Virus record (IMG/VR): IMGVR_UViG_3300049217_000071
Location: 62,001-126,000 of that record
Reading direction: 5' to 3' (one strand)
Length of the DNA stretch: 64,000 nt
The notes under the pieces are model-generated. The model saw only the letters and a program-made list of their open reading frames with translations, made no database searches and was not told the DNA's origin. The translations under genes and the position numbers were made by a program. Positions 9,975-47,220 of this stretch are shown here, one piece after another (position 1 is the stretch's first letter; the number at the start of each line of letters is the position of its first letter).

Positions 9975-10153
9975 TGAAAACTTTAGAACACAACCTTTAT
10001 ATTGAAGTGCAAGACACTCCTGATGGTCAAAAGATCCTGGATGAGCTAGTGGTTTGGCTCTGTGGATTGAAACACGAATATCCTAAAGCATATCTCAATG
10101 GTTGGATCGGCCCAGTCAAAGAGACTAAGAAGAAGTCCAAAAAATCAAAATGA
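9974..10153 (+). CDS. hypothetical protein (59 aa, below the ORF-track cutoff)
   Basis: MKTLEQHLY...KKSK*; stop overlaps the stub ATG at 10150. Confidence 0.6.
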   Translation: MKTLEHNLYIEVQDTPDGQKILDELVVWLCGLKHEYPKAYLNGWIGPVKETKKKSKKSK

Positions 10154-10194
10154 AATCCTTGGGCAAGCTGGTTTACTCACCACGCACCCACCTC
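10150..10194 (+). pseudogene. orphaned N-terminal stub of the 10939 gene
   Basis: MKSLGKLVYSPRTHL vs MKSIGKLVYNPRSHL at 10939. Confidence 0.9.
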
Positions 10195-10891
10195 AAGACA
10201 GATTCTGCAATGCAGAAATCTGTCCAACCTTCGCAAGAAAATTCTCTTGGGAGAGTGTTCCCTTCATTTTATTGCACGTGAAACAGCAGGATACGCAGTT
10301 GTCCAACTCATATCCTCGATCGTTATCGATTCGATCAATGCCGTTTCTAACCTCCCTGCCGACTTGTGTTTTGGTATGCGGCAGATCACCGCAATAAAAG
10401 CATCGAGCCGTGCATAGTTGTTTGAACTCATCAACAGTCATATCGAAATGAAGACTAGATTTTCTGTGCAGATCTGCCCTTCTAACGATGACCCTGGCGA
10501 CATAGGATCTGTATTCTGTGGGCCATGGGTCTTTTGAAATGGACTTTACCTTGTTATAGCAGCCACAAGATACCGTAGGAGATTTACCAGGTCCACTCTG
10601 TACTCTCAAGTTGCTAATCAATACCGTAGTGGTATTGCCACATTCACACCGGCACAATACAGTTGGGCATCCGTTTTTCCAAGTCCCTACTCTCGCTAAC
10701 ACCGTAAGCTTTCCAAACGTCTGTCCAACATACCTGTAAGGTCTTTCTGATAGGTGTGCACTCTCGATCAATCGTCTGACTGCATGTTCCGAAAGCTTCA
10801 ATCGTTTGGAAATGCTTTTTCGGCTATGACCGGCCGCCCACAGTTTGAATATCTCGTCCGTTTGAACCTGGCTAAAAACGATCCTTTTCAT
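10193..10891 (-). mobile_element. free-standing HNH endonuclease gene
   Basis: HTH, G.TFGKLTV, CRCECG, SCGC, CFYCG, NGIDRIDN..GY...NCVSCC..CN..K; GAGGTG RBS before ATG 10891. Confidence 0.9.
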
Positions 10892-10938
10892 CTTGCACCT
10901 CTCACCCATTATGCCCATATATAGCGAACAGATGCCAA

Positions 10939-11343
10939 ATGAAATCCATAGGGAAGCTAGTGTACAATCCTCGTAGTCATCTAGGATCGAGTGAAAAGTG
11001 GGCCATTTTGGCATGTGATGATGAGATTTCCAAATACTACAGGCATCTCTTCACCAAGGACTACCCGTATTTGAACGGAGAGCGAGTGGGCAAGCTGACC
11101 CGTCCGGTGTGGGGAACTCACATTTCTATCATTCGAGGGGAATATATTCCGAACTTCAAGCTATGGGGTCTGGACGCCAACAAGGTGATCGAGTTCACTT
11201 ACGAAGGTGGCGTTATAGACAACGGTGAATACTACTGGTTGAAAGTCAACTGTCCTTATATTGGAGATTTGCGCGAGAAGTATGGGTTGAAGAGGGAGCC
11301 GAAATTTGGTTTCCATTTGACTATCGGGAGAACCACAGAATGA
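10939..11343 (+). CDS. putative 2H phosphoesterase
   Basis: two Hx[ST] motifs: THISII and FHLTIG. Confidence 0.65.
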   Translation: MKSIGKLVYNPRSHLGSSEKWAILACDDEISKYYRHLFTKDYPYLNGERVGKLTRPVWGTHISIIRGEYIPNFKLWGLDANKVIEFTYEGGVIDNGEYYWLKVNCPYIGDLREKYGLKREPKFGFHLTIGRTTE

Positions 11344-11443
11344 ATAAGAACGAAATCAAGAAGATGGAAATCAAGAACGCAGAAATTGTCGCTTTGGTTC
11401 TTCTATTCGGCATCCTGATTTGGCTGATTTTCAGGAGATAATT

Positions 11444-11770
11444 ATGAGCCAAGTAACATCTACCTTCTATATGATGTGTTGGGGTTGCAATAGAACTTTG
11501 CCACGTCCCTATCTTGGTGAAGAAGATTATGCTCGTCAAATGCAAGAGCTAATGACAATGGGTTGGCAGCGAAGGGTTTTTGGACCAGGCGCTGATCCTT
11601 GGTTCTGTAGTGATGACTGCGCCCACAACTCAGCCAATGCCAAACGAGCGGAAGCTTGGTGGGCCAATAAAAAGAACAAAGAAGAAGTCTCCCTTTACCT
11701 AACCATTGCGGGAAGCGGAATGCTTCTCCTCGTTGGTTTGGCAGCTTTACTGGTGGCGGTGTTTCGATGA
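11444..11770 (+). CDS. Zn-finger protein with C-terminal TM helix
   Basis: CWGC...FCSDDC; hydrophobic C-terminus. Confidence 0.6.
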   Translation: MSQVTSTFYMMCWGCNRTLPRPYLGEEDYARQMQELMTMGWQRRVFGPGADPWFCSDDCAHNSANAKRAEAWWANKKNKEEVSLYLTIAGSGMLLLVGLAALLVAVFR

Positions 11771-12432
11771 TTCATCACAATGAGTTCTATCTCAGCCTAA
11801 TTAGGCACGGTCAGTCGGCCGTCAATATCCAACCGGATATGATGGGCCAAGCACCAGATACTCCCTTGACTGATAAGGGTATTTCTCAAGCAGCACTGCT
11901 GGGACAGCGTCTCAAGGGAGAGGATAAGAAGTTCGACTACGTCTTTACCTCTGACTATATTAGGGCCTACAACACCGCTAAGATTGCGATGGGAGAAGAT
12001 TATCCAATGATAGTCAGCTCCGCTCTCCGAGAATATAGTGCAGGCGATTGGGATGGGGCCTCCCGTAAAGAGATTCAGACAGAACGTCTGAAGCTAAGAA
12101 TGGCCGCTATGACCAATGCCTTCTGTCCGCCTAATGGCGAATCATTGCATATGGTGGAGCGCCGAGCCTCCCAATGGTTGGAGGATACCGTCCTCTACAA
12201 CGAAGGATTTATCAACGAAACGGCCGCTCGTCATGAGCTTGGCCTCAAGCCGATGGAGATAGCAGTTTTCTCCCACGGTATGACTATCAAGTGTCTACTA
12301 CATTACATTATGGGGTTTGATCAGAGCTTTACTTGGAAGCTCACCCTGGAAAACACATCTATCTCAAAACTACATTTTGGAATGGAAGGATGGCGATTGC
12401 TTACGATCAATGATCACGCACATTTACTATGA
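11767..12432 (+). CDS. histidine phosphatase family protein
   Basis: LIRHGQS, LRE..AG.W, P..GES, FSHG, N.SIS, ND.AHL. Confidence 0.93.
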   Translation: MIHHNEFYLSLIRHGQSAVNIQPDMMGQAPDTPLTDKGISQAALLGQRLKGEDKKFDYVFTSDYIRAYNTAKIAMGEDYPMIVSSALREYSAGDWDGASRKEIQTERLKLRMAAMTNAFCPPNGESLHMVERRASQWLEDTVLYNEGFINETAARHELGLKPMEIAVFSHGMTIKCLLHYIMGFDQSFTWKLTLENTSISKLHFGMEGWRLLTINDHAHLL

Positions 12433-12962
12433 ATGAGGTCTCCATGGGAGTCCAAGAACGAAAACGACAAAAACGAATACGAGACTATGTTATTGACCGA
12501 GATGGAATGTTGTGCTGCTACTGCGACAAGGTGTTAGAGCCAGAGACTGTCACGATGGAACATATTGTTCCAGACAGTCGAAGAGGAACTTTCAATACGA
12601 CGAACCTGACCGTCTCCTGTGCAGAATGCAACAACAGACGAGGCAACAAGCCCTTCTTTGATTACTGTAAGAAGTTCAACTTCCCGGAAGATAAACTGAA
12701 TAAGTATAAGCAACTATACTTCAACAACTTACGAATCAAGGTATTGAATATCTCCAAAGAGGAATGTCTCAAAGATGATGAGGATATTCCGGCTGCGCTT
12801 ATCAAACGAGCTTGTCAGATTCTCAAGATCAAAAGCATGGACTTTGATGATTACGAGAAGGCTTATCCCTTTGAGATAAAATTCAGTGAGCCTTGCGACC
12901 GCAGAAAGATCAAGTTTTGTTTCGAGCAATTGATCAGGATTATCGAAGAAGACAGCAAGTGA
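12429..12962 (+). CDS. HNH nuclease
   Basis: RDG..CCYC, TMEHIVP.S..G, NL..SC..CN..RG. Confidence 0.9.
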   Translation: MNEVSMGVQERKRQKRIRDYVIDRDGMLCCYCDKVLEPETVTMEHIVPDSRRGTFNTTNLTVSCAECNNRRGNKPFFDYCKKFNFPEDKLNKYKQLYFNNLRIKVLNISKEECLKDDEDIPAALIKRACQILKIKSMDFDDYEKAYPFEIKFSEPCDRRKIKFCFEQLIRIIEEDSK

Positions 12963-12991
12963 GGCGATATATTTGGCATAGGAGATAAACT

Positions 12992-13965: not shown

Positions 13966-13971
13966 TTTTCT

Positions 13972-14283
13972 ATGGAACAGCCTGAGATATGTCCGCGTTG
14001 CCATTTAGAATGGAGCTTTCAAGATAGGTGGACTATCTGCCTCCCGTGTAATGTTGTTCTTTTCAAACACATAAAAGAAGTGTGTTGGTATAGTCCGTTG
14101 AATTCCGATTATGTTATCATGTCCAACATAGAAAACACCGCGGGCCACCCATTTTTAGCTTGGCATTACTCCCACAATATTTGTTCCTATGGATTAGATG
14201 GTGGGGGCGATCCTATTACTTTGCCCTGGCTTCCCTTCGACATAACGTCAGATCGTTTGAAACTTTTGCTACTGTTCTCGTAA
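13972..14283 (+). CDS. CxxC protein with C-terminal RLKLLLLFS
   Basis: see finding on shared C-terminus. Confidence 0.65.
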   Translation: MEQPEICPRCHLEWSFQDRWTICLPCNVVLFKHIKEVCWYSPLNSDYVIMSNIENTAGHPFLAWHYSHNICSYGLDGGGDPITLPWLPFDITSDRLKLLLLFS

Positions 14284-14287
14284 ACCT

Positions 14288-14359
14288 ATGAAACACTATC
14301 CTACTATCACCAAAGAGATTAGGCACGACCTATCAATACTTCCCTATAGTAGTATCTAA
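14288..14359 (+). pseudogene. orphaned N-terminal stub of the RNA-ligase-like gene
   Basis: MKHYPTITKEIRHDLSI vs MKLYPSIPRMQRNDIPSI at 15409. Confidence 0.75.
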
Positions 14360-14378
14360 CCAACATGGGGGTGTAGTC

Positions 14379-15449
14379 ATGGGCAAAATAGTGGGAAAGT
14401 GTATCGAATGTGGCAGAGAAAACAGACTAACACGAGGGTACTGTTCAACCTCTTGTTATTCGAGGTTGTTGCGATCTGGAAAACTGGATAGACTTCCTAT
14501 CATCCCACTTCCAAACGTTATGACTGGTCGTCAATCCGAAATGCTTACTGGACTAATGTTGGGAGATGGATGTCTATTCAAGTTCTCCGACAATGCTTTT
14601 CCGGTTCTATCGGTTGTCCGACAAAGAGGAGATGTAGGCTATTTGGATGATCGGTATCAAGAGTTCAAGTCGTTTTGTTTGAGTGGCATTCGTTTATATG
14701 AGGTCTTTGATGATCGAACGAACAAGACATATGAGGGGTGTAAGTTTACCACCAGAGGTTGCTCCGTTTTCACCCCCTTTTACGATGCGTGGTACGGTGG
14801 TGGAACAAAAACAGTACCAAGAGAGGTACGACTCTCGCCATTTGTGTGCTCTATATGGTTCTGTGATGATGGATGCGTTTTTGCAGACGATAGAAAGCGT
14901 CTCCATTTGAAACTGGCTACTCACGGTTTTCCGAATGAAGATACGGTATGGTTAGCTAAACGGCTGTCATCAAAGTTAGGAGAGCATTTCTATGTTGGAC
15001 ACGATCAGGGCCATGCATTCATTATGGCATCTGATGCGGCCACCAAGTCTTTCATTGGGTACATACAGGACATCATTCCATCCAGTATGGCTCGAAAGAT
15101 TACGTGGACAGACGAGCATTTTTTGATGGCCCGCTCTCGCCCACAGCTCAAAAACAGGCGCGTAGAGGATCTAAACGACAAGGAGTTTTCGTTGATGTCG
15201 TTTTTGTCCAGGTGCAAGTTGCCCCAATCATCCCTTGAGATGTGTACCAAAGTAGGTTGGATGGGCAAAACCGGTAGGACGCCATCAGCCTACAATAGGT
15301 ACCTGAAAAGGTTCTTGAGTGCGGGATGGATGAAGCCGACCAAGCTGGTCATACATGGTAAGAGCAACACCAAATACATGATCACTAACAAGGGAAGAGG
15401 AGTCTTACGTGAAGCTGTATCCTTCAATACCAAGAATGCAAAGGAATGA
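14379..15449 (+). mobile_element. free-standing double-motif LAGLIDADG endonuclease gene
   Basis: LTGLMLGDGC and SIWFCDDGC; C-terminal winged-helix-like tail. Confidence 0.9.
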
Positions 15450-16026
15450 TATTCCAAGCATCTACTTGTACTTGTTTGCGAAGGTCGACGGATCTAATAT
15501 CCGTGCGGAATGGAATAACAAACGAGGCTTCTACAAGTTTGGCACCCGCAATCAATTGACGGATGAGAAGACGATGCCTTTTGGCCGCTCTATCCCTTTG
15601 CTGCGAGATAAGTATGAAGCTGACCTGGCCAAGGTGTTCAAGGAGCAGGGTTGGAAGGACGCTATCTGTTTCTTCGAGTATTGGGGTGCCGAGTCTTTTG
15701 CCGGCAACCATAACTTTGAGGCCACGATGGATATTACCCTGATTGATGTCAACCCTTATAAAAAAGGAATACTGGTGCCGGTCGATTTCATCGAACTCTT
15801 CGGGCACCTTGATATACCAAGAGTTTGCTACCAAGGCCACGTCTCGACCGAGCTGTTTGACGGAGTCAAGCAATCCACTTTTCCTGGAATGACTTTCGAG
15901 GGTGTGGTGTGTAAGGGTGAGGAAGATGGTCGCATTGTGATGTTCAAGATCAAATCGCAGGCTTGGTTGGATAAATTGAGAACCTTTTGTAAAGGTGATG
16001 AAGGTTTGTTTGAGAGACTATCGTAA
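15409..16026 (+). CDS. RNA-ligase-like nucleotidyltransferase
   Basis: KVDGSN (motif I), FFEYWG, LIDV, FEGVVCK, FKIK. Confidence 0.75.
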   Translation: MKLYPSIPRMQRNDIPSIYLYLFAKVDGSNIRAEWNNKRGFYKFGTRNQLTDEKTMPFGRSIPLLRDKYEADLAKVFKEQGWKDAICFFEYWGAESFAGNHNFEATMDITLIDVNPYKKGILVPVDFIELFGHLDIPRVCYQGHVSTELFDGVKQSTFPGMTFEGVVCKGEEDGRIVMFKIKSQAWLDKLRTFCKGDEGLFERLS

Positions 16027-21622: not shown

Positions 21623-22189
21623 ATGATATACGCCATCAGTTTCAAGCATAAGATTCCTGAGGGCGTCCTGTCTATGGATGTGACGTCCAGGTCAGGCACC
21701 TGGGGTAGGCACTTTAGCCCTTTCAATCTGGGGCCGGTCGATCTATATGACGGCTATGTGTCCCGCAACATCGAGAATGCCTTTCAGTATTCCAAGGTGT
21801 ATGCGGAATATTCTACCGTCTATGAACTGCCGGCTCCCCATTATTGGGAGTGGGCCAAAGCTGGTTGGGATAATCCTAAACCCAACAAGTATCCTATGGG
21901 TGCTTGGAACAAACACTTGTATCATTGGTGGGATAATAAGAAGCTGACCAACCTGGAAGCTCAAAACCAAATCTTCTTACCTCTCTACAAGAAGGCGGTG
22001 ATTGATACGCCAGCTTTCAAGAAACTGAAGGACAATTATCTGCATTCCGACAAGGATATTTATTTGATTGACTTCGAGGGGTATAATCATCGATTTTTGG
22101 AAAAGACCTGGGATCAGGTTATAAATGATCCCGACCGACCTGTGGGGCAAGCTTTTGCCCTGTGTATGTTGTTAGAAGGATACTTATGA
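21623..22189 (+). CDS. uncharacterised protein, paralog 1 (DUF6939-like, possibly NADAR-related)
   Basis: DVTSRS, FSPF, IENAFQYSKVY, YPMG, DFEGY. Confidence 0.7.
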   Translation: MIYAISFKHKIPEGVLSMDVTSRSGTWGRHFSPFNLGPVDLYDGYVSRNIENAFQYSKVYAEYSTVYELPAPHYWEWAKAGWDNPKPNKYPMGAWNKHLYHWWDNKKLTNLEAQNQIFLPLYKKAVIDTPAFKKLKDNYLHSDKDIYLIDFEGYNHRFLEKTWDQVINDPDRPVGQAFALCMLLEGYL

Positions 22190-22749
22190 TTCATGTCATT
22201 GGGCCTAATGATAAAGCTCCTGAAGGGGCTGCCATCATCAATACTACTTCCAGATCGAATACCTGGAGTCATTCACTGAGCCACTTTTTCTGTGGCCCCG
22301 TGGATTTATATGGTGGCTACAAATCTCTCAATGTGGAGAATGCTTGGCAGTTTTCCAAAGTGTATGAATACTACTTGGAAGCGGATGGTTCTGTAGGAGA
22401 ACGATACTTCAAGTGGGCCCAAGACGGATGGAACGATAAGTATGCTCATCGATATCCAATGGGTAAAGGAGTGGCCCCTCTGTTTTCCTATTGGGACGGA
22501 TATAGCCTGACATATGTAGAGGCTCGTAAAAAGATTTACATTCCTCTGTATTCTAAGGCGGTGCAAGAAACTTTCGCCTTTGAGAAATTGAAAAAGATGC
22601 ATCAGGAAGGCGCCGACCTTTACTTGTGGGATTTCGATGGTTATGATCATAAGATGTGCAATTTGTCTTATGAGCAGGTCATCAATAATCCTGACAGGAA
22701 GATGGGACACGCTTTTGTCATTGCAATGTTGTTAGAAGGCCACTTATGA
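22186..22749 (+). CDS. uncharacterised protein, paralog 2
   Basis: TTSRS, VENAWQFSKVY, YPMG, ARKKIYIPLY, DFDGY, GHAF. Confidence 0.75.
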   Translation: MIHVIGPNDKAPEGAAIINTTSRSNTWSHSLSHFFCGPVDLYGGYKSLNVENAWQFSKVYEYYLEADGSVGERYFKWAQDGWNDKYAHRYPMGKGVAPLFSYWDGYSLTYVEARKKIYIPLYSKAVQETFAFEKLKKMHQEGADLYLWDFDGYDHKMCNLSYEQVINNPDRKMGHAFVIAMLLEGHL

Positions 22750-33130: not shown

Positions 33131-35002
33131 ATGTCATCAAATCGCATTACCGAGCTGGCTGATAAGATTACCCAGGCTCGATTGGACTATTACAATGGTC
33201 AGCCAACCGTTTCTGACAAGATTTTCGATGCTTGGGCCGATGAGCTTCGCACCCTGGACGCTAATCACATAGCTTTGACGGCTGTAGGTGCTCCTGTCGG
33301 CCCTTCCGAATGGAAGAAAGCTAAGCACCAGATCCCGATGGGATCTCTCAACAAAGTCAATCAACCTGCCGAAATGTTGGACTGGGCCAGTGATAAGAAC
33401 TGCAAGTCCTGGTTTATGACGGAAAAGCTGGACGGACTCTCTATAGAAGTGATCTATGAGGGTGGTAAGGTGGTACAAGCCATTACCCGAGGTGATGGTG
33501 AGACGGGCGAAGACATTACGGTCAACGTGATTCGTATGGGTGGAGTCAATCCCGATTTGAAAACTGACTTCAATGGTTCCCTTCGTGGTGAAATCATTAT
33601 GAAGAAGAGCATTCATCAGAAGTTCTTCGCTGATAAAGCCAATCCTCGCAATGCAGCTTCTGGTGTTTCCAAGCGTTTGGATGGTGTGGATGTGGATAAG
33701 CTCGACATTCTCTTCTACCAAGTTTTGGGTGATGTAGATTTCAAAACGGAAGAAGACCAGTTCAAGTGGTTGCAGAAGCATAAAGTCGGCACTCCCAACT
33801 ATTGGATCTGGAGTTCGGCTCTTGCCATCAATGTTATGTGGCGTGAATACCAAGACAAAGAGCGCGATAAGCTGGATTATGATATCGACGGACTGGTGGT
33901 TCGTATCAATGACATGGCCGATCAAATGGCTTGTGGTGATAAAGACCTCCGCCCCTTGGGTGCTATGGCCTTCAAGTTTGACAATGAGACCCGTGAGAGC
34001 ACTATCAAAGACATCATCTGGCAGGTGGGCAACAGTGGACGCCTAACTCCGGTGGCTGTGGTGGAGCCCGTTCTCCTGGTGGGAGCTATGGTTTCCCGAG
34101 CCAGCTTGTATAACATTGCCTACATTGAGGAATTGGGTTTGGATATCGGGGCCCGCGTCCTGGTGGCCCGAGCTAATGACGTGATTCCTCGCATTGAGGA
34201 GTTGGTCAAGGGTACCAAGACGGTAGCCAAGATGCCCAAGAAGTGTCCTGATTGTGGTGGAATAGTGGATATGCAGGGTGAGAACCTGATTTGCACCAAC
34301 ACGGAGAACTGCCGATCCCAGATCATTGGTCGCATCAAGAACTGGATCAAAGAACTCAACCTGTTGGAGTGGGGGGATTCTTTGGTGGAGAAGTTGGTGG
34401 ATGCTAAGAAGGTCAAGAACATTGCTGACCTCTATACTCTTCAAGTGGATGACATTTCCAAGTTGGATCGCTTGGGAGATAAGACGGCCAAGAAGTGTTT
34501 GGATATCTTGAACGCTAATAAGAATGTAGCTTTGGAAGTCTTTTTAGGCGCTTTATCCATTCCAACTATTGGGCAATCGACGATTAAATTAATAATGAAA
34601 GATGGTTGTGATACTTTAGAAAAGTTTGGTCAGTTAAGTAGCGTTCAATTTGAGCAGGTATCGGGAGTAGGTCCGGTCAAAGCGCGATTTTTAGCTGATG
34701 GACTCAAACATAATCAGCAACTAATCCTTGATTTGTTAAAAAATGGAGTGGAGATCAAAGAAATTGTTGATGGCAAATTGACTGGTAAAAGTTTTGCTAT
34801 TACTGGAACGCTCTCTATCAAGCGCGCTGAGGTTGAAAAATTGATTCAAGACAATGGCGGTGAAGTGAAAAGTAGCGTTGGAAAAGGATTGAACTACCTA
34901 ATTATTTCTGATCCACAATCTACCAGCAGTAAAGCACAAGCCGCCCGAAAGTTGGGTACCGTTCTTATTAACGAGGCACAATTTTTAGACTTGATTAGCT
35001 AA
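33131..35002 (+). CDS. ligA: NAD+-dependent DNA ligase
   Basis: EKLDG, TRGDG..GEDIT, NPRNAA, DGLVV, Zn finger, HhH, BRCT. Confidence 0.97.
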   Translation: MSSNRITELADKITQARLDYYNGQPTVSDKIFDAWADELRTLDANHIALTAVGAPVGPSEWKKAKHQIPMGSLNKVNQPAEMLDWASDKNCKSWFMTEKLDGLSIEVIYEGGKVVQAITRGDGETGEDITVNVIRMGGVNPDLKTDFNGSLRGEIIMKKSIHQKFFADKANPRNAASGVSKRLDGVDVDKLDILFYQVLGDVDFKTEEDQFKWLQKHKVGTPNYWIWSSALAINVMWREYQDKERDKLDYDIDGLVVRINDMADQMACGDKDLRPLGAMAFKFDNETRESTIKDIIWQVGNSGRLTPVAVVEPVLLVGAMVSRASLYNIAYIEELGLDIGARVLVARANDVIPRIEELVKGTKTVAKMPKKCPDCGGIVDMQGENLICTNTENCRSQIIGRIKNWIKELNLLEWGDSLVEKLVDAKKVKNIADLYTLQVDDISKLDRLGDKTAKKCLDILNANKNVALEVFLGALSIPTIGQSTIKLIMKDGCDTLEKFGQLSSVQFEQVSGVGPVKARFLADGLKHNQQLILDLLKNGVEIKEIVDGKLTGKSFAITGTLSIKRAEVEKLIQDNGGEVKSSVGKGLNYLIISDPQSTSSKAQAARKLGTVLINEAQFLDLIS

Positions 35003-35078: not shown

Positions 35079-35669
35079 ATGAGGAAACGCAAAGTATATT
35101 TAGCTGATTCACCAGGACGCCCATCATCACGAGCAGTGTATTTCAATGGGGCTGTGTGGAAACCTGTCGATGACAAGACAAACTATTCGGTGGCTGATGT
35201 AGTTGAATGTTCGACTAATGGTAATCTTCTTTTGGTTGGTAATGAAACTTGGGAAGAAGTTTTTAGGAATAAAGGCGCTGTTAAGTGTAAAATACAAGAG
35301 TGTGAGAATGGGCCCCCTTTCATTAGGGGATTATGTAATACTCATTATCAACGAGCGCAGAGATGTGGTGATGAAAATTACATACCATATATGGCTCCCA
35401 AAGGAACTGGATTCACTCATAAATCAGGATATCGTATAGTTTCTGATGGCAATGGTGGTAAAATTAAAGAGCACCGTTTGGTAATGGAAAAGCATTTAGG
35501 TCGCAAACTTTTACCAGAAGAAAATGTTCACCACAAAAATGGAAACCGCTCTGATAATAGATTAGAAAATCTTGAATTGTGGAGTACAAAACAACCACAA
35601 GGTAAAAGAATAGAAGATTTAGTGGTGTATGCCAAGGAAATATTGAAGCTTTATGGAGATGAATTATGA
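35079..35669 (+). mobile_element. free-standing HNH endonuclease gene
   Basis: EHRLVME.HLGR.L...E.VHHKNG.R.DNR.ENLELW. Confidence 0.92.
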
Positions 35670-35830
35670 CTGTTTATAAAAAAGGTATATTAGATTGGTG
35701 TTCATCCGTGGAAGAAACTTTTCAGCCACGCGAGAATTTAACACGTGCAGAAGATGCTAAACAAATTCCAGAGCAATTTTTAGCAACAGCCATCCGATAT
35801 CTACGTGCTGTATGCAAGTAGCTTCCCGAT

Positions 35831-35866
35831 ATTTCTAAAGATGAGTTCTTGGAGTTGGTGAAATGA
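35831..35866 (+). pseudogene. probable orphaned C-terminus of ligA
   Basis: ISKDEFLELVK* vs INEAQFLDLIS*; stop overlaps the next ATG. Confidence 0.6.
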
Positions 35867-36264
35867 GTATCTTTGTAAGAATGGCTGACGCAATAATCAA
35901 TATCATTGGCCCGCCCGATGATATCAAGGCCGTCTATGTGCCTGCCAAGCGTGTAAGAGAAGATTTGGATGTCCCCAATATCTTTGTGGGCAAAATTATG
36001 GACGATGGAAACATCAAGTGTGAAGTTGTTGCCCATAATAACAAGAACAATATGCACGTCAAGATACTGGAGATCAAATGGGAACGTCTGGGAACCTATT
36101 TTGATGTAGGTAAAATCTATCCCGTGTTTATGCACTCTAACGGAATCTTGGGCGAAGGAATGCAGATTTGGGAGATTTCTTCCAAACGTATGAAGCGAGA
36201 TACTTCTCAGGTATTGTTGTGCTGGGAAAAAGATATTGGTTGGAGTTGGGACTTAGATTTTTGA
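35863..36264 (+). CDS. hypothetical protein
   Basis: 133-aa ORF. Confidence 0.65.
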   Translation: MSIFVRMADAIINIIGPPDDIKAVYVPAKRVREDLDVPNIFVGKIMDDGNIKCEVVAHNNKNNMHVKILEIKWERLGTYFDVGKIYPVFMHSNGILGEGMQIWEISSKRMKRDTSQVLLCWEKDIGWSWDLDF

Positions 36265-36813: not shown

Positions 36814-37013
36814 TGTGCACCTGTGAGAATAGAATGTGCCCCAAATGTGATCCGGGCATTGAAGCTTTCTATCAGCAAAAGCTAAAAGAAGCTGGTTCGT
36901 TTGCAGACTATATTGATGCTAAGGATGTTTGGTATGAGTATTGCGCTCTCAAAGCCGAAGAAGCGGCTGATGATGCTGTGCAACCTAAAGATGAATCGGA
37001 ATGCACTTACTAA
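36813..37013 (+). CDS. hypothetical protein
   Basis: TAATG coupling. Confidence 0.5.
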   Translation: MCTCENRMCPKCDPGIEAFYQQKLKEAGSFADYIDAKDVWYEYCALKAEEAADDAVQPKDESECTY

Positions 37014-37297
37014 TTGCTCTCCTTGCCATTTTCGGTTTAGCCTTTGCTATCAAAGAGACCTCCGGTCCTTTTGATGTCTTGGATAAGCTGCGTGGTTTAC
37101 TGATGCGAAACAAATACGTGGGAGTTTTCTTCTACGGTTTGCTTTCCTGCTATTTCTGCGTGGGTTTCCACTGCGGGTGGATCGTTTATCTATTGAGCGA
37201 GGAAAATTACACGTGGCAATTTTTTATGCTTTATGGTTTGGCTGGCGGAACGGTTTGTTTAATCATTGATGCCTTGCTCTCGAAGCTCCATCAATAA
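37001..37297 (+). CDS. membrane protein (DUF1360-like)
   Basis: GPF....LR, LLSCYFCVGFH, TM helices. Confidence 0.7.
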   Translation: MHLLIALLAIFGLAFAIKETSGPFDVLDKLRGLLMRNKYVGVFFYGLLSCYFCVGFHCGWIVYLLSEENYTWQFFMLYGLAGGTVCLIIDALLSKLHQ

Positions 37298-37964
37298 CAT
37301 TTTGTTTGGCTGATAACGGTCGCAAATTATCTAATGCCCAACATTTTTGGAAGTTAGCATCATTCATAGAAGAATAAAGCAGAGTTGATTGAGGGACAAT
37401 ATGATCAATCTGCCAAGTCCAAGTGGATGAATCATTATCATCCCAAATTTTATGATTGTACGAGCCATGATTTTGCCAGGTCATCCACGGCTCAAAATGC
37501 TTTTCGAGATGCGATTTTAATTCTTGGAAAGAATACGGAAGATATTTAGTTATCGATCCGTTTTTGGATATGGCTTTCTGAACGCTTCTACTAATAATTT
37601 TTCTCAATCGAAAAGCGATATCGTTTTGTCTTCTCTTTCTATCTTGCTCTCTTCGTATTGCCTTATGTTCTGCACGATAATTTCTGTTGTACTCTGAGAT
37701 TTTATCTTTATTCTTTTTCTTGTATGCAGATTTTCTCTTCTTCACCACTTCTGCGTGGTTCAGTCGATATCTTTTTTCGTTTTCTCTACACCGTTCTTTG
37801 TTGTTTTGGTGCCACTCAGTAGTTTTGTTATTTTGACATTCTATACAATAGGGGGCCCAATAAATAGAGATGACACCCGATTTTTTTATGTATTTTCTTT
37901 GCTTAAAGTTGTCTACTGTTAGTTCCAAACTACGATTACAGCTAATACAAATCTTGTGTTTCAT
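37263..37964 (-). mobile_element. free-standing HNH-type endonuclease gene
   Basis: CISC, YCIEC, HLEKHF..WMTW.N.G, WQIDHIVP, CWAL.NLRPL....N. Confidence 0.88.
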
Positions 37965-37988: not shown

Positions 37989-38069
37989 TTTTTTATTTTG
38001 TGGGGACTTGCGCTGCTCGTTATGAGCCTTATTATAGATGGAGTCTTGACACGTCTCCACCGTGAATAA
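37989..38069 (+). pseudogene. orphaned C-terminus of the 37001 membrane gene
   Basis: FFILWGLALLVMSLIIDGVLTRLHRE* vs FFMLYGLAGGTVCLIIDALLSKLHQ*. Confidence 0.85.
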
Positions 38070-38416: not shown

Positions 38417-39880
38417 ATGGGAAGCGTCAAAGTTGAAGAATCTATTAAACAATGGACTCTTAACTATACTGACATAATTTTGAATAGTAATAAATTCTAT
38501 TCACTTGAGGTAGTTAAAACTAATAAAGGCTATTTCTTATACACCCAATATGGCAGGGTCGGAGGCACCAAAGCCAAGGAATATCGCCAATGCTCCGATC
38601 AAGCTGATGCCGAATCTGAAGCTACCAAAATCGTCAAAGCTAAAACCAAGAAAGGATATGTAGAAGTATCTTTGGTCAAGTCGGATGTCGGAAGTGATGC
38701 TGCCCAAGCTAAAATAGAAAAAGTCTCAGCTACCACTGAACAACTAAAGAAAGCTGGTATTACCGTTAAAGAAGAGCCTGCCGTTGCCAGCAAACTTCAT
38801 ACAGAGGTTCAGGATTTAGTCAGAACATGGTTCGGCGTAACTCAAGAGTTCGTCGATCTTAACCTTGACACATCCAAATGTTCTTTAGGACAACTTTCAA
38901 TTCTACAGATTACCAAAGGCAAAGACCTATTGGATGAAGCTCGCAAAATTGTTCATATGACAAAACCAGATGAACAAGAGCTTAATAAGTTGACTAATTC
39001 TTACTATAGCAATATTCCTCACAATTTTGGTTATACCAGAATTGATGCCAACGCTTTGCGTTTGGACTCAGACGTTAAGATTGATAAGGCTTTTGATATG
39101 CTTGACGTTCTAAATCAAGCTAAAGATGTCGAAGCAGTTATCTCCAAGAAGAGTGCAGTCGATGCACAGTATGCTACTCTCAATGCCGACCTTGAGTTCA
39201 TTGAGCAGGGTACTCCCACGTTCAAGTGGATTGAGAAGATGGTTCTGGAAACCCGAGCCAGCAACCACAGCGGCTTAGGTAAACTGAAGGTTCACAAGGT
39301 CTTCCGTGTCACTCGTCACGATGAGGACAAGCGATTCATTGAGAATTGCCAAGTCATCGCCAAGGAGTGCGGTAAGTTCGTGCCCTCTGATGTGTATGCT
39401 GGTTTGGTCAAGAACCGTCCTGATGTTCCCAAGGCATTGGAAGACCTCTACCACAAAGCAAATGTCCTTCCTGGTTGGCACGGAACTCGTAGAGCCAATA
39501 TGATTGGTATTACCACCAAGGGACTTCTTATTCGTCCTTCTGGTGTTATTCACGCTGGTAGTATGTTTGGAGATGGCTGTTATTTTGCTTCATCTTCGTC
39601 AAAATCAATTAATTATTGTGATGTTAAGGGATCATATTGGGCACAAGGAAATAATAAAACAGGATATCTATTTCTGTGTGATGTAGCTTTTGGAAATCAA
39701 AAAATGGCTACTGGCTCACATTATTATAATTCAAATAACATCAAGCCATATCACAGCGTATGGGCTAAAGCTGGTCAAGGCGGAGTTATTAATGATGAAA
39801 TGATTACTTACCATGCTACGGGACCAAATCAGCAGCATGCTATAAAATATATAATCGAGTTTGAGACGCAGGTGAAGTAA
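38417..39880 (+). CDS. PARP-family ADP-ribosyltransferase (WGR + regulatory + catalytic)
   Basis: NKFY..E, QYGRVG, K.KKGY; LGQLS..QI; YYS.IPH; WHGT, G.MFG.G.YFA..SSKS.NY, NDE (H-Y-E). Confidence 0.93.
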   Translation: MGSVKVEESIKQWTLNYTDIILNSNKFYSLEVVKTNKGYFLYTQYGRVGGTKAKEYRQCSDQADAESEATKIVKAKTKKGYVEVSLVKSDVGSDAAQAKIEKVSATTEQLKKAGITVKEEPAVASKLHTEVQDLVRTWFGVTQEFVDLNLDTSKCSLGQLSILQITKGKDLLDEARKIVHMTKPDEQELNKLTNSYYSNIPHNFGYTRIDANALRLDSDVKIDKAFDMLDVLNQAKDVEAVISKKSAVDAQYATLNADLEFIEQGTPTFKWIEKMVLETRASNHSGLGKLKVHKVFRVTRHDEDKRFIENCQVIAKECGKFVPSDVYAGLVKNRPDVPKALEDLYHKANVLPGWHGTRRANMIGITTKGLLIRPSGVIHAGSMFGDGCYFASSSSKSINYCDVKGSYWAQGNNKTGYLFLCDVAFGNQKMATGSHYYNSNNIKPYHSVWAKAGQGGVINDEMITYHATGPNQQHAIKYIIEFETQVK

Positions 39881-40140
39881 TGAAAACAGATGACGCTCTC
39901 TATAAAGAGATACAAAAAGATATAGCTAATGGTGTAGCGGTAGTTCTTCGAGAAACTATCACATTCGATGGTATAATCAAACAGCAATATATCGTAAGAA
40001 TGTTTTTAGATGGAATCAATATTATGCTTTGGAAATACTCAGACATCACATCTAGGTGGGAATCCAAGTCAATGAGTTGGCTACAGTTGGACGCGCAAGA
40101 AATAAAGACGCTACAAACATTTCTACTCAAGTTCAACTAA
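39880..40140 (+). CDS. hypothetical protein
   Basis: TAATG coupling to PARP. Confidence 0.55.
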   Translation: MKTDDALYKEIQKDIANGVAVVLRETITFDGIIKQQYIVRMFLDGINIMLWKYSDITSRWESKSMSWLQLDAQEIKTLQTFLLKFN

Positions 40141-40806
40141 GTGGGGCCAAGTAATTCCTCTAATAGCTCGTGAGATAGCTGATTCACTAACATTTAACAT
40201 TTTGCTCAGTTGAACGAATGTCATCCCTTCTCGATGTAATTTTCGTGCTTGAAGAACGATTTCGTCGGTAAGTTTGGCAAAGCTATTGGCACTACCTAAG
40301 ATTTTTTTACCATAGAATGGATTATCGGCCCCAAAGAACTTTCTATTTGGATTTTGGCTCATTAGCTGTTTAGATTGTTGGCTGTGTTGTTTTCCGAAGA
40401 AACTGTTTCCGGCACCCTGTCTTTGTTCTGACATTGATTGTTTGGTTTCTTCTGAATGATGTTTTCCGAGCATACTTGGTGTTCGAGGTTTTATCACTAC
40501 CGTTTTGGTAGCTAACTGTCCGCCTCCCGTTAGGTTATAGCCAAACTCTTTTTTGTTAGACCGGAAAAATTGAACCCAAAATTGTTCAGCCTCATCTATT
40601 GTTTCTTTTGTGTGTTGCTCAATTTCTATAAACTCAAAATTATCTAAACCATATTTTCTGATGCTTCGATATATTGGCTTGTTGTTGAGCTTCGTGAAAG
40701 CTTCGTATTTATGGCGGCCCTGGCGCCTTTTCATATTGTTAGTTTGCCCTACATAAAGTTTTGAGTTTGTTTTGTTGCGGATAATATAGATAGAATACAT
40801 AGTCAT
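40123..40806 (-). mobile_element. GIY-YIG endonuclease gene (NUMOD3-like repeats)
   Basis: SIY.I.N..N.KLYVGQT, GYNLT.GG, GKHHSEETK, FFGKQHS. Confidence 0.92.
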
Positions 40807-44043: not shown

Positions 44044-44051
44044 ATAGGTAT

Positions 44052-44678: not shown

Positions 44679-44687
44679 GGAGTTCCT

Positions 44688-44891: not shown

Positions 44892-45541
44892 CACTCAAGA
44901 TAGTAGCAATAAGTGATACGCACTCTCATCACCGCAAGCTGAGCTTGCCCGATGGGGATGTTCTCATTCATGCCGGAGATATCTCCTGGCGTGGCGAGCT
45001 TCCTATCATCGAGGACTTTGCTGCCTGGTTGAAAGAGCAGCCGCACAAGAAGAAGATTGTTATCTTCGGTAATCACGAGATCGGTTTTCAGCACGGCTAT
45101 AAGAGGCCGATGGCTATCAAATTGATCCAAGACGCCGGTGCCATCTATTTGGAGAACAGTGGCGTGGAGATTGACGGCGTCAATTTCTATGGTTCCCCAG
45201 TGCAGCCGTGGTTCCACGATTGGGAGTGGAACTATCAGCGAGGTCCCGAGATTGCAGCAATTTGGGCCCAGATTCCTACAAATACCAACGTGCTCATCAC
45301 CCACGGCCCGCCCTATCTAATTATGGACGAAGCTCCTCGGGGAGTCTTTGATCACGAGAATGTAGGTTGTAAAGACTTGATGAACAGACTGGGAGATTTG
45401 CCCGATCTGAAAGCTCATGTCTTTGGTCATATCCACGCAGGCTATGGCACCCGACAGATCGGTCCTTGCCTCTTTGTCAATGCCGCTTCCTGCACGGAAC
45501 AATATGCGGCCACTAACCCACCCATTGTATTCGAGGTGTAA
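44888..45541 (+). CDS. calcineurin-like metallophosphoesterase
   Basis: SDTH, HAGD, GNHE, THGPP, FGHIH. Confidence 0.93.
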   Translation: MTLKIVAISDTHSHHRKLSLPDGDVLIHAGDISWRGELPIIEDFAAWLKEQPHKKKIVIFGNHEIGFQHGYKRPMAIKLIQDAGAIYLENSGVEIDGVNFYGSPVQPWFHDWEWNYQRGPEIAAIWAQIPTNTNVLITHGPPYLIMDEAPRGVFDHENVGCKDLMNRLGDLPDLKAHVFGHIHAGYGTRQIGPCLFVNAASCTEQYAATNPPIVFEV

Positions 45542-45542
45542 G

Positions 45543-45974
45543 ATGAAAGTCAAGCCTAAAGAAATTATGGTAGTGCTACCGGCTGCTCATCTCTTCCAGT
45601 CCGAGGATGAGATGGCCAGCTTTGCTTCCGCTATCAATACCATCATTCACGGCAAGGTCAAGATCAAATACGAAGTGCTGGGCCAATTGGGCGGCCAGTA
45701 TGTCGGGCTCTTCTACATTCAGAGGAACAACGAGTCGCAGGAAATTCACGATGAGTTTGTTCGTCTGATTGAACAGGAAGAGATTAGAGATCATTTTTCG
45801 GGGGAAGAATTGCCGGAAGATGATGAGATGCAAGTTTCAGATGCCGGCGCCACCATATTTCATCGAATCTGTCCTGACTGTGATGCATTGAGTATGCTAC
45901 ACCAAAAAGGTCTTCAGCACTGTGAGTGTGGTGAAGATTGGGTGAATGGCCGATGTGAATCTCGAAGGGAATAA
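45543..45974 (+). CDS. hypothetical protein with C-terminal Zn ribbon
   Basis: CPDC...CECG. Confidence 0.6.
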   Translation: MKVKPKEIMVVLPAAHLFQSEDEMASFASAINTIIHGKVKIKYEVLGQLGGQYVGLFYIQRNNESQEIHDEFVRLIEQEEIRDHFSGEELPEDDEMQVSDAGATIFHRICPDCDALSMLHQKGLQHCECGEDWVNGRCESRRE

Positions 45975-45980
45975 ATCAAA

Positions 45981-46025
45981 ATGATTGTTGCATTCACGGG
46001 TCATCGACCTGACAAGCTGGCGTAA
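45981..46025 (+). pseudogene. orphaned N-terminal stub of the SLOG/YspA gene
   Basis: MIVAFTGHRPDKLA* vs MIVAFTGHRPEKIGG. Confidence 0.93.
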
Positions 46026-46045
46026 GCCGCGATATATACCTTTGT

Positions 46046-46750
46046 ATGAAGGCAACCGTAGAAAAAGTCATCCAAACTTATCTTGAAGTAAAAAGTATCC
46101 GTAAAGCCGCCGAATTGACAGGCTATTCAAAATCTGGTGTTCAGCATTTGTTGACGACCAATAATGTCGCCTTGTTTCCACGCAGCAGGGGTGGGGCCGA
46201 AAATTCTTCTCGCAAAGCCATTTTGGATTTGGACGCTTCTAATCCAAGAAGGTTAGTTCGTAATACCGGCTATATGACGGATTTATACATTGACAAGAAG
46301 ATGTCAGTCCCTGAAATTGCTCTCCAATTAGGAATAAGTACCGCAACAGTTTTTACTGGTTTAGAACGGTGTGGCATTGCATCAAGAACAATAGAAGAAG
46401 CATTGACCGGTAAGCCAAGGCCAGCCTCACAAGGATCCAAAAACCATAACTGGAAAGGTGGACTATCTGGCTGGAGGAAACTGGCCCGTGGTAGGCTCAA
46501 CGAACATTTTGTTCGCCCAATAATGAAACGAGATAACTTCTCCTGTCAGTGGTGTGGCTCGAAGAAGAATATCGTAGTTCATCACCACAAACGCTCGTTT
46601 ATGGAGATTGTCAATCTAGTCAGACAACAGTGTGATGAAAAAGATATAGACCAGTTTGTCAAACTCATAATTAGCGAACATTCATTAGATGACGGAATTA
46701 CGCTTTGCAAGAAGTGCCACGACAATCACCATAAGGAACACGGGAAATGA
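46046..46750 (+). mobile_element. free-standing HNH endonuclease gene
   Basis: two HTH, NHNWKGG, RDNF.CQWCG, VHH, GITLCKKCH...H. Confidence 0.9.
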
Positions 46751-47220
46751 TAGTAGCTTTTACGGGTCATAGGCCAGAAAAAATCGGAGGATACAGACTC
46801 CCTAACCCCACTTACATTCACGTCTGTCAAGAGATCGAAAAGACTCTGACGGAACTCCGGCCCTATATGGTCATCACGGGAATGGCTTTGGGTGTCGACC
46901 AATGGGCAGCTAACATAGCCCGTAAGATGAAGATTCCTTATATCGCTGCCATTCCTTTCGAGGGCCAAGAGTCCAAATGGCCTAAGCGGAGTCAGCGGAC
47001 TTATCGCGCTCTCCGTAAGCTGGCTATGGGTGAAACCATTGTCAGCCCTGGAGAGTACTCGGTAGAGAAGATGCAGATCCGTAATCAGTGGATGGTAGAT
47101 AACGCGGATGCCGTCATTGCCGTGTGGGATGGAACTCGGGGTGGAACCAAGAACTGTATTGAGTATGCTAAATCTCAGAACAAGCAAATTTATTACATTG
47201 ACCCGCGCCTTGACAAGTGA
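46747..47220 (+). CDS. SLOG superfamily YspA/DUF1273 protein
   Basis: FTGHRP, GMALGVDQWAA, PF.GQ...W, RN.WMVD, VWDG..GGT.NC..YA. Confidence 0.9.
   Translation: MIVAFTGHRPEKIGGYRLPNPTYIHVCQEIEKTLTELRPYMVITGMALGVDQWAANIARKMKIPYIAAIPFEGQESKWPKRSQRTYRALRKLAMGETIVSPGEYSVEKMQIRNQWMVDNADAVIAVWDGTRGGTKNCIEYAKSQNKQIYYIDPRLDK

What the first reader, a model, noticed from the sequence alone, without database searches (positions are those of the whole stretch)
10150..47220. Recurrent terminus-replacing homing endonucleases: invading coding sequence without splicing
Seen: at five loci a free-standing endonuclease gene lies between two divergent copies of the same protein end. N-termini are duplicated at 10150/10939, 14288/15409 and 45981/46747; C-termini at ~34970/35831 and 37220/37989. 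One copy is a dead stub and the other is fused to the intact gene. Protein similarity persists while wobble positions differ, so these are not target-site duplications. In two cases (10150, 35863) the stub still has the native ATGA overlap with its neighbour, marking it as the ancestral end. Both HNH and LAGLIDADG enzymes, in either orientation, show it. Known: intron- and intein-borne endonucleases are harmless because they splice; free-standing ones usually sit between genes; integrative phages such as e14 and phage 21 restore icd with a recoded end. Inference: these cassettes (endonuclease + promoter + recoded gene end) insert near a gene's end, repair the gene and destroy their own recognition site. 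I do not know this as a described genome-wide strategy for homing endonucleases, but cannot check the literature.
Basis: partly seen in the sequence, partly recalled or inferred. Interest (0 to 1): 0.92.

Follow-up and report, generated by a model that had tools for sequence, protein, structure and literature searches.

The report
Homing endonucleases that replace gene ends
In this uncultivated giant phage, five selfish endonuclease genes each arrived with a foreign copy of the neighbouring gene's end and left the original end behind as a dead stub, a pattern known from fungal mitochondria that I could not find described for phages.

Summary
In each, an HNH or LAGLIDADG gene lies between a short dead copy and a complete, in-frame copy of a neighbouring gene's N- or C-terminus. 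Endonuclease-free relatives show the stubs are the resident ends at the RNA-ligase-like, DNA-ligase and membrane-protein loci. At loci 1 and 5, position favours the stub but sequence does not decide.

The "recoded" ends are natural alleles from other phage lineages. Stub and fused copy differ mostly at third codon positions. At the DNA ligase, the whole 3' ~145 codons form a 100/100 clade with two other phages, against the rest of the gene. One of those phages carries the same HNH with no stub. A passenger gene came in too, and it meets the stub without any extended homology.

Best explanation: intronless homing between diverged phages, homologous on one side and illegitimate on the other.

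No intron signal was found. An independent assembly has identical sequence at the two loci checked (2 and 5).

The same architecture (endonuclease ORF, foreign terminus, native duplicate) is published for Allomyces and Glomus mitochondria, so the idea is not new. I found no phage description.

Verdict: partly supported, a new variant of a known kind, moderate interest.

The parts
10150..10194 (+). L1 stub: the first 15 codons of the 2H-phosphoesterase-like gene. Its ATG overlaps the stop of ORF 9974-10153 (ATGA).
   Evidence: It is 85% identical over 54 nt to L007, including 9 nt upstream of the ATG.
10193..11014 (-). L1 HNH endonuclease. The likely true start is the ATG at 10891, which has a Shine-Dalgarno-like sequence.
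   Evidence: PHROG HNH / endonuclease VII families, E 1e-16. Absent from 23 related loci. Start analysis.
10939..11343 (+). L1 intact gene (134 aa, 2H phosphoesterase-like). Its first ~20 codons are closest to different relatives than the rest of the gene.
14288..14328 (+). L2 stub: the first ~14 codons of the RNA-ligase-like gene. The short ORF runs on to 14359.
   Evidence: 91% nt identity to the start of the uninterrupted gene in L049. Closer to all 5 relatives than the fused copy is.
14379..15449 (+). L2 LAGLIDADG endonuclease with two motifs. Its last 41 nt overlap the new start of the host gene.
   Evidence: Pfam LAGLIDADG_2, E 6e-19. Absent from the 6 related loci, where the upstream gene overlaps the host gene directly.
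15409..16026 (+). L2 intact RNA-ligase-like gene. It has a GTG start, a strong Shine-Dalgarno sequence and a divergent N-terminus with a 3-codon insertion.
34571..35002 (+). L3 imported 3' tract of the NAD-dependent DNA ligase (gene 33131-35002). It runs from codon ~481 to the end, covering the HhH tail and the BRCT domain, and includes the fused end.
   Evidence: Sliding identity. Tree: the window, L068 and L087 form a 100/100 clade here only. Domains.
35079..35669 (+). L3 HNH endonuclease.
   Evidence: Pfam HNH_3, E 5e-12. A 73% homolog sits between the ligase and the next gene in L087, with no stub.
35666..35821 (+). L3 passenger ORF. Its ATGA overlaps the HNH stop. It lacks its last 2-3 codons.
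   Evidence: A 72% aa homolog directly follows the ligase in L127. It is joined to the stub at GAT|ATTTCT.
35831..35866 (+). L3 stub: the last 11 codons plus stop of the resident ligase. Its stop overlaps the ATG of gene 35863-36264.
   Evidence: Closer than the fused end to 21 of 24 relatives. Insertion point mapped at 34968/35830 against L058. L097 shows the empty site, with the ligase followed directly by the same neighbour.
37001..37297 (+). L4 intact 98-aa membrane-protein gene. Its last ~23 codons (37228-37297) are the replacement end.
37263..37964 (-). L4 HNH endonuclease. Its 3' end overlaps the replacement end by 35 nt on the opposite strand.
   Evidence: PHROG endonuclease VII family, E 1e-9. 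41-51% homologs sit at other positions in relatives. Overlap.
37989..38069 (+). L4 stub: the last ~26 codons plus stop of the resident gene. It is contiguous with the resident downstream flank.
   Evidence: One 73% alignment to L058 runs from the stub through 94 nt of downstream flank. The C-terminus is ...RLHRE*, as in L058, L095, L111 and L127.
45981..46022 (+). L5 stub: the first 13-14 codons of the SLOG/YpsA-family gene, followed by a stop.
   Evidence: 82-86% nt identity to L032, L036 and L045.
46046..46750 (+). L5 HNH endonuclease. Its stop overlaps the ATG of the intact gene (ATGA).
   Evidence: PHROG HNH family, E 5e-19. Absent from 19 related loci.
46747..47220 (+). L5 intact SLOG/YpsA-family gene (157 aa).
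   Evidence: Pfam YpsA, E 7e-19, covering residues 3-152.

Best explanation
Each locus is the footprint of intronless homing by a free-standing endonuclease that crossed between diverged giant phages.

Proposed sequence of events:
1. In the donor, the nuclease gene sits next to gene X.
2. In a recipient that lacks it, the nuclease cuts inside the terminal coding region of X.
3. The break end on the gene-body side is repaired by homologous recombination with the donor. This copies the donor's version of the gene end (up to ~435 nt at the ligase), then the nuclease gene, and sometimes a passenger gene.
4. The other break end finds too little homology and is joined illegitimately.
5. The recipient's own terminal codons beyond the break therefore survive as a short dead stub.

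Consequences: gene X stays complete because the donor allele supplies the missing end. The recognition site is lost, because the donor allele differs there and the resident sequence is split. Once formed, the composite has homology on both sides (gene body, and stub plus flank), so it could home precisely into related empty alleles.

Shown: the anatomy, the foreign origin of the fused end at L2-L4, the co-transferred tract, the absence of extended homology at the right junction at L3, and the absence of introns.

Inferred: the cleavage positions, the immunity of the fused allele, and the order of events.
For: - The nucleases are HNH or LAGLIDADG. They are absent from the same loci in 5-24 relatives.
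- The insertion is point-like against endonuclease-free relatives. At L3, homology to L058 stops at window 34968 and resumes at 35830. At L4, it stops at 37227 and resumes at 37989, continuing into the downstream flank.
- The stubs match uninterrupted alleles: L2 91%, L3 86%, L1 85%, L5 82-86%.
- The stub is closer to relatives than the fused end in 5 of 5 (L2) and 21 of 24 (L3) comparisons.
- Stub and fused copies are 47-72% identical, with most differences at third codon positions (10 of 14 at L1, 9 of 11 at L5). The two copies therefore diverged as working genes in separate lineages.
- In ligase codons 481 to the end, the window, L068 and L087 form a 100/100 clade. In codons 101-480, L087 is sister to L055 (100/99) and the window groups with L058, L068 and L097.
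- L087 has the order ligase, the same HNH (73%), next gene, with no stub. This is a donor-like arrangement.
- L097 shows the empty site, with the ligase directly followed by the same neighbour.
- The passenger ORF 35666-35821 is native to the position after the ligase in L127. In the window it lacks its last codons and abuts the stub with at most 2-4 nt of microhomology.
- No Rfam hit at E<=1 across 10000-47300.
- One-sided homing with illegitimate repair at microhomologies is documented for T4 (Parker et al. 1999, as summarised in PMC2988022).
Against: - At L1 and L5, the stub and the fused copy are equally similar to relatives. Which is resident rests on position only.
- No donor genome was found for four of the five nucleases.
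- In four loci the inserted segment is very compact: the nuclease ORF, 25-50 nt, and the gene end. That fits repeated precise homing of a pre-formed unit better than a fresh illegitimate event.
- L068 has the "foreign" ligase end but no nuclease, so that tract can also move, or persist, without it.
- At L2, an unrelated 103-aa ORF (13972-14283) separates the stub from its original upstream neighbour. At least one more event is needed there.
- No cleavage data exist.
Confidence: 0.72

Rival explanations
1. Dedicated composite elements. In this view, endonuclease plus replacement terminus (plus its own promoter) is an evolved mobile unit. Its way of life is to insert inside coding sequence near a gene end. 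It homes as a unit, using the gene body and the stub as its two homology arms.
For: - The inserts are compact, and the nuclease ORF is physically interlocked with the replacement end: a 41-nt overlap at L2, an ATGA overlap at L5, and a 35-nt antisense overlap at L4.
- GATATATA occurs 6 times in the window against 1.8 expected. Three copies lie 7-28 nt upstream of nuclease start codons.
- At L2 and L5, the stub ORF ends ~20 nt before the nuclease ATG, so the nuclease inherits the host gene's expression signals.
- Five of the seven sporadic nuclease genes in the window have this form.
- Mitochondrial endonuclease ORFs of the same build are reported as mobile (PMC3630166).
Against: - The same HNH in L087 sits cleanly between genes with no stub.
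- About 17 nuclease loci in relatives gave no accepted stub in a flank scan.
- The replacement ends are ordinary lineage alleles.
- The L3 insert carries a truncated passenger gene joined without extended homology, which looks accidental.
- No second genome with the same composite was found, other than the same phage re-assembled.
Confidence: 0.2
2. The nuclease genes lie in self-splicing introns or inteins. The stub is a true first or last exon that is joined to the gene body.
For: Phage endonuclease genes often reside in group I introns. Short terminal exons are easily missed (PMC10448857).
Against: - No group I or II intron or any other Rfam family at E<=1 in 10000-47300.
- The fused genes are already complete and align with relatives from residue 1 or to the last residue. 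Splicing would duplicate 11-26 residues.
- Two of the nucleases are on the opposite strand.
- All of them have their own start and stop codons, which excludes inteins.
Confidence: 0.02
3. Local tandem duplication of the gene end within this genome, followed by decay of one copy and a chance landing of a nuclease gene between the copies.
For: The two copies are direct repeats at the protein level.
Against: - The copies are only 47-72% identical in DNA, with differences concentrated at third positions while amino acids are kept. A dead copy could not evolve that way.
- The ligase end tree places the fused end with other phages.
- The same thing would have to happen five times, always with a nuclease gene in the gap.
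Confidence: 0.03
4. Metagenome assembly artefact, in which strain variants with and without the nuclease were stitched in series.
For: The window is a metagenomic contig (IMG/VR UViG 3300049217_000071).
Against: - The Logan assembly of run ERR9963781, a different assembler, is 100% identical over 5.7 and 6.1 kb spanning L5 and L2.
- The stubs are 82-91% identical, not 100%, to any sampled relative.
- Reading frames, overlaps and start signals are coherent at all five loci.
Confidence: 0.02

Closest known systems
Mobile endonuclease ORFs (mORFs) that create gene hybrids in fungal mitochondria: Allomyces macrogynus atp6; Glomus sp. atp6, atp9, cox2 and nad3; Rhizopus atp9; Mortierella cox2 (PMC3630166 and the work it cites)
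   Same: - A LAGLIDADG or GIY-YIG ORF is inserted near a gene's 3' end.
- It carries a foreign, in-frame C-terminus.
- The native C-terminus is left downstream as a duplicate that is closer to the sister species.
- The copies are ~64-81% identical in DNA but nearly identical in protein.
- Several genes in one genome are affected.
   Different: - The host here is a dsDNA phage, not an organelle.
- Four of the five enzymes are HNH.
- Three of the five cases replace the N-terminus.
- Two nucleases are antisense to the host gene.
- Transfer here would occur during co-infection. No expression or cleavage data exist here.
Intronless homing by free-standing Seg and Mob endonucleases of T-even phages: SegF, SegG, SegB, MobE (PMC2988022, PMC2330249, PMC2790892)
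   Same: - Free-standing HNH or GIY-YIG genes with sporadic distribution.
- They cleave in a neighbouring gene of the naive phage.
- Flanking markers are co-converted, producing mosaic genes.
- Host expression signals are entangled with the nuclease gene.
   Different: The T-even nucleases are described as sitting between genes or splitting genes. In the review searched, the terms for duplication, remnant and truncation did not occur at all. Here, the resident end survives as a stub at five loci.
[quoted passage not shown]
   Same: Homology on one side of the break is enough. The other junction forms at microhomologies. This is exactly what the L3 right junction looks like.
   Different: That work was an engineered laboratory system with an intron. 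These are natural events with free-standing genes.
Tremella fuciformis mitochondrial introns carrying N-terminal duplications of the host gene (PMC7315562)
   Same: An N-terminal gene fragment is duplicated, and part of the gene is replaced by foreign sequence through a mobile element.
   Different: There, the duplicate lies inside a spliced intron. Here there is no intron, and the nuclease gene is free-standing upstream of the new start.
Genes split by endonuclease insertion: Aeh1 nrdA/mobE, T4 genes 39/60 with mobA, phage 25 gene 43 (PMC2988022, PMC3045599)
   Same: A free-standing nuclease gene sits inside a coding region, and the host function is retained without splicing.
   Different: Those genes are cut into two polypeptides that reassemble, and nothing is duplicated. 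Here the gene remains one polypeptide, and the cut-off piece is replaced.
Integrating elements that rebuild the end of the gene they insert into: e14 and phage 21 in icd (own knowledge, not checked here)
   Same: The incoming DNA carries a diverged copy of the gene's end, so the gene stays intact. The old end is displaced.
   Different: Those use a site-specific integrase and att sites in a bacterial chromosome. Here the enzymes are homing endonucleases, and repair is by recombination.

Membership tests
Free-standing homing endonuclease genes (intronless homing) | Nuclease of a homing-endonuclease family, encoded outside any intron or intein | tested here: met
   Pfam LAGLIDADG_2 and HNH_3, and PHROG HNH / endonuclease VII families, for all five. 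No Rfam intron. Each has its own start and stop codon, and two are antisense.
Free-standing homing endonuclease genes (intronless homing) | Sporadic presence at an otherwise conserved locus among related genomes | tested here: met
   Absent from the same locus in 23 (L1), 6 (L2), >20 (L3, except L087), >30 (L4) and 19 (L5) related loci. By contrast, HNH 12429-12962 is conserved in nearly all relatives and has no stub.
Free-standing homing endonuclease genes (intronless homing) | Co-conversion of flanking sequence with the nuclease gene | tested here: met
   L3 only. The ligase 3' 145 codons form a 100/100 clade (window, L068, L087) that is incongruent with codons 101-480. For L1, L2 and L4, sliding identity only hints at mosaicism.
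Free-standing homing endonuclease genes (intronless homing) | Site-specific cleavage of the nuclease-free allele, and resistance of the nuclease-carrying allele | not testable with these tools
   Needs purified enzyme and DNA substrates.
mORF-type gene hybrids (mitochondrial endonuclease ORF plus foreign gene terminus) | Endonuclease ORF flanked by two diverged copies of the same gene terminus, one of them in frame with the gene | tested here: met
   Five loci.
mORF-type gene hybrids (mitochondrial endonuclease ORF plus foreign gene terminus) | The detached copy is the native one: closer to relatives without the insert, and contiguous with the native flank | tested here: met
   Met at L2, L3 and L4.
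mORF-type gene hybrids (mitochondrial endonuclease ORF plus foreign gene terminus) | The same native-copy criterion, applied at L1 and L5 | tested here: inconclusive
   The stub and the fused copy are equally similar to relatives (70 vs 70% and 74 vs 75%). Only position and the ATGA overlap favour the stub.
mORF-type gene hybrids (mitochondrial endonuclease ORF plus foreign gene terminus) | The hybrid gene is expressed, the native remnant is not part of the product, and the element is mobilised by its nuclease | not testable with these tools
   No transcript or biochemical data exist for this uncultivated phage.
Intron-encoded homing endonuclease (group I/II) | Ribozyme core around the nuclease ORF, and exons that must be joined to make a complete gene | tested here: not met
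   Zero Rfam matches at E<=1 in 10000-47300. The fused genes are complete without the stub.
Intein | In-frame insertion translated with the host protein | tested here: not met
   The nuclease ORFs are separate cistrons, and two are on the opposite strand.

The most novel reading that the evidence does not exclude
In giant phages, free-standing homing endonucleases have a splicing-free route into coding sequence. The route is a composite of nuclease gene and xenologous gene terminus that homes as a unit, using the displaced stub as one homology arm. In its N-terminal form the composite takes over the host gene's promoter and ribosome site for the nuclease and re-starts the host gene by translational coupling. 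It also drives domain-sized allele swaps, such as the ligase BRCT domain, and moves passenger genes between lineages. If so, this would be a general and so far unrecognised mode of phage gene mosaicism.
Probability: 0.3. Interest if true: 0.68.

Novelty: new variant of a known kind. Interest (0 to 1): 0.5.

Why it matters
- The stubs are natural footprints. They mark roughly where each nuclease cut, which allele is immune, and how much flanking DNA travelled with it. That makes five uncharacterised nucleases of an uncultivated giant phage directly testable with synthetic substrates.
- The loci show that phage endonucleases can enter coding sequence without introns, inteins or gene splitting. 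They extend a mechanism known from fungal mitochondria to viruses.
- They document nuclease-driven exchange of a whole protein domain and of a passenger gene between lineages.
- For annotation, such stubs produce spurious small ORFs and chimeric genes that distort phylogenies.

Tried and rejected
- Megablast of both regions against GenBank phages found nothing. Protein searches found only <=42% relatives: Bacillus phage G, RaK2-like phages and an uncultured 595-kb phage.
- IMG/VR scans for relatives of the LAGLIDADG and of HNH 46046 found nothing closer than 40% and 35%, so no donors were found for these.
- Self-similarity alone cannot detect L2 or L3.
- A sigma-70 promoter and terminator scan of the cassettes gave chance-level hits.
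- I guessed that ORF 35666 was an N-terminal fragment of the donor's copy of gene 35863. BLASTP found nothing. L127 then showed it is a separate gene.
- I searched for a macro-domain N-terminal stub beside GIY-YIG 40123. The result was negative.
- A possible N-terminal stub beside a GIY-YIG gene in L058 scored 37-43, but it is hydrophobic low-complexity sequence. I rejected it.
- A flank scan of ~17 nuclease loci in relatives gave no accepted stub. The scan would miss weak cases such as L2 and L3.
- Six of the eight literature searches run were aimed at a phage description of terminal duplications next to endonuclease genes. They returned none (papers read). The library holds only open-access papers.

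Full report
**Source and setting**

The window is positions 62001-126000 of IMG/VR contig UViG 3300049217_000071, which is 268 kb long. It belongs to a clade of uncultivated giant phages with related contigs of 350-500 kb. These come from metagenomes and share 60-85% protein identity with the window. Nothing close is in GenBank phages. The window carries 17 tRNA genes. It also has an NAD-dependent DNA ligase, a PARP-like protein, GroES and other genes typical of such phages.

- In a six-frame scan of the whole window, the stubs of L1 (10150), L5 (45981) and L4 (37989) are far above every other non-self match.
- L1 and L5 also top an unbiased scan for translated self-matches 180-1800 nt apart. 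Controls at other spacings never exceed 46.
- L2 (14288) and L3 (35831) are not significant by self-similarity. Relatives prove them instead.
- The L2 stub is 91% identical over 44 nt to the start of the uninterrupted gene in L049. The L3 stub is 86% identical over 36 nt to the ligase end of L063.
- The five intervening ORFs are endonucleases: LAGLIDADG_2 and HNH_3 by Pfam, and HNH or endonuclease VII families by PHROGs.
- A separate Logan assembly of run ERR9963781 is 100% identical across L2 and L5, the two loci checked. Misassembly is therefore unlikely.

**Which copy is resident**

Against endonuclease-free relatives the insertions are point-like.
- L3: homology to L058 ends at window 34968 and resumes at 35830. 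Both positions correspond to the same L058 position, 36 nt before the ligase stop.
- L4: homology ends at 37227 and resumes at 37989. It then runs through the stub into 94 nt of downstream flank.
- L097 shows the empty L3 site, with the ligase stop overlapping the start of the same neighbour gene.
- The stub is closer to relatives than the fused end in 21 of 24 (L3) and 5 of 5 (L2) comparisons.
- At L1 and L5 the two copies are equally close to relatives (70 vs 70% and 74 vs 75%). Only position and the ATGA overlap favour the stub as resident.

**The "recoded" ends are alleles from other lineages**

- Stub and fused copies are 47-72% identical in DNA. Most differences fall at third codon positions and the amino acids are kept. 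That pattern can only build up while both copies are working genes, which means in different phages.
- The ligase gives the clearest case. In its last ~145 codons (the HhH tail plus the whole BRCT domain), the window, L068 and L087 form a 100/100 clade on a long branch.
- In codons 101-480, L087 is sister to L055 (100/99), and the window groups with L058, L068 and L097.
- L087 carries a 73% homolog of the same HNH between its ligase and the next gene, with an ATGA overlap and no stub. This looks like the donor arrangement.
- L068 has the same type of ligase end but no nuclease.
- The window's insert also contains ORF 35666-35821. In L127 the homolog of this ORF directly follows the ligase. In the window it lacks its last 2-3 codons and abuts the ligase stub at GAT|ATTTCT, with at most a few bases of microhomology.

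So at L3 the transferred segment was about 435 nt of ligase, the HNH gene and a passenger gene. It was joined homologously on the left and illegitimately on the right.

**Mechanism**

This is what intronless homing should leave behind when donor and recipient are too diverged on one side of the break. The nuclease cuts in the terminal coding region. The gene-body end is repaired from the donor, with co-conversion. The far end is joined without homology. The recipient's own codons beyond the break then survive as a stub.

One-sided homing with illegitimate junctions at microhomologies has been demonstrated for T4 (summarised in PMC2988022). The cleavage positions and the immunity of the fused allele are inferred, not shown.

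**Features that fit a more organised element**

- Four inserts are compact, and the nuclease ORF interlocks with the replacement end. The overlaps are 41 nt at L2, ATGA at L5 and 35 nt antisense at L4.
- At L2 and L5 the stub's short ORF stops about 20 nt before the nuclease ATG. The host gene is then restarted by overlap or coupling.
- GATATATA occurs six times in the window against 1.8 expected. Two copies lie just before tRNA clusters and one lies before an ORF.
- The other three copies lie 7-28 nt before the nuclease ATGs of L3, L4 and L5. A related CATATATAG sits in the divergent spacer at L1.
- This hints at a phage promoter inside the cassettes. The sigma-70 scan was at chance level.

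**Features that fit accident**

- The same HNH has no stub in L087.
- About 17 other nuclease loci in relatives showed no accepted stub. The scan used would miss weak cases.
- HNH 12429-12962 is conserved in nearly all relatives and has no stub.
- The sporadic GIY-YIG gene at 40123-40806 has none either.

**Rivals excluded**

- Introns: there is no Rfam match at E<=1 across 10000-47300. The fused genes are complete on their own.
- Inteins: the nuclease ORFs are separate cistrons, and two are antisense.
- In-genome duplication: ruled out by the substitution pattern and by the ligase end tree.

**Comparison with the literature**

- The architecture is published for fungal mitochondria. Endonuclease ORFs there carry a foreign C-terminus and leave the native one as a downstream duplicate. 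Examples are Allomyces atp6 and four genes of one Glomus genome, with the same identity pattern (PMC3630166).
- C-terminal duplicates of cob and atp6 lie among endonuclease ORFs in Endoconidiophora (PMC6279837).
- N-terminal duplications lie within Tremella introns (PMC7315562).
- T-even work describes co-conversion, entangled promoters and split genes (PMC2988022). The review's text contains no term for duplication, remnant or truncation.
- Six literature searches aimed at a phage case returned none.

The finding is therefore a phage version of a known mechanism. Its differences are HNH enzymes, N-terminal replacements by free-standing genes, antisense arrangements and an unusually high local density.

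**Verdict**

I rate it a new variant of a known kind, with interest 0.5.

Noticed in passing
window 3310, 35043, 37972(-), 46031, 49009, 55063; related motif at 10916-10924: GATATATA occurs 6 times against 1.8 expected. It always lies 7-28 nt upstream of a tRNA gene, an ORF or a nuclease start codon. This makes it a candidate phage promoter. The two HNH genes with the ATG 7-8 nt downstream would be nearly leaderless.
   Followed up: partly
window 13966-14284: A 103-aa ORF with no Pfam or PHROG match and no homolog in any fetched locus sits exactly at the junction where, in relatives, the upstream gene's stop overlaps the RNA-ligase-like gene's start. It is flanked by CCTGTGA and CCTATGA, as if inserted with a 7-nt junction duplication.
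   Followed up: partly
window 35666-35821; L127 477-647: A small conserved ORF travelled with the HNH as a passenger. In L127 it directly follows an endonuclease-free ligase.
   Followed up: yes
window 12429-12962: An HNH_5/HNH protein between a histidine phosphatase and GroES is conserved at 50-80% identity in nearly all relatives. It is a vertically inherited, probably domesticated HNH rather than a mobile one.
   Followed up: yes
window 40123-40806 (-) and 40868; L056 6777-6997: A sporadic GIY-YIG/NUMOD3 endonuclease lies upstream of a 160-aa gene. L056 holds a degenerate copy of it. In both endonuclease-bearing genomes the downstream gene starts with TTG. In relatives without the endonuclease it starts with ATG.
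   Followed up: partly
window 61075-61689 (-): A second GIY-YIG endonuclease lies just upstream of the adenylosuccinate synthetase gene (61714-62916). Its flanks were not compared with relatives.
   Followed up: no
L015 2010-2645 and 3513-4112; L019 4412-5047; L013 2679-3167; L022 6000-6716; L058 3547-3975; L115 5144-5716: Relatives carry other HNH, GIY-YIG and LAGLIDADG genes at different positions in the same neighbourhoods. The whole clade is rich in endonuclease genes.
   Followed up: partly
window 21623-22749 and 5044-6027 (-): Two tandem paralogous ORFs (21623-22189 and 22162-22749) and a Kelch-repeat protein on the minus strand turned up as internal repeats in the self-similarity scan.
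   Followed up: no
window 38417-39880: A WGR, PARP-regulatory and PARP-catalytic protein is highly conserved across the clade. Its C-terminal 120 residues are up to 95% identical to those of L058 and L068.
   Followed up: no
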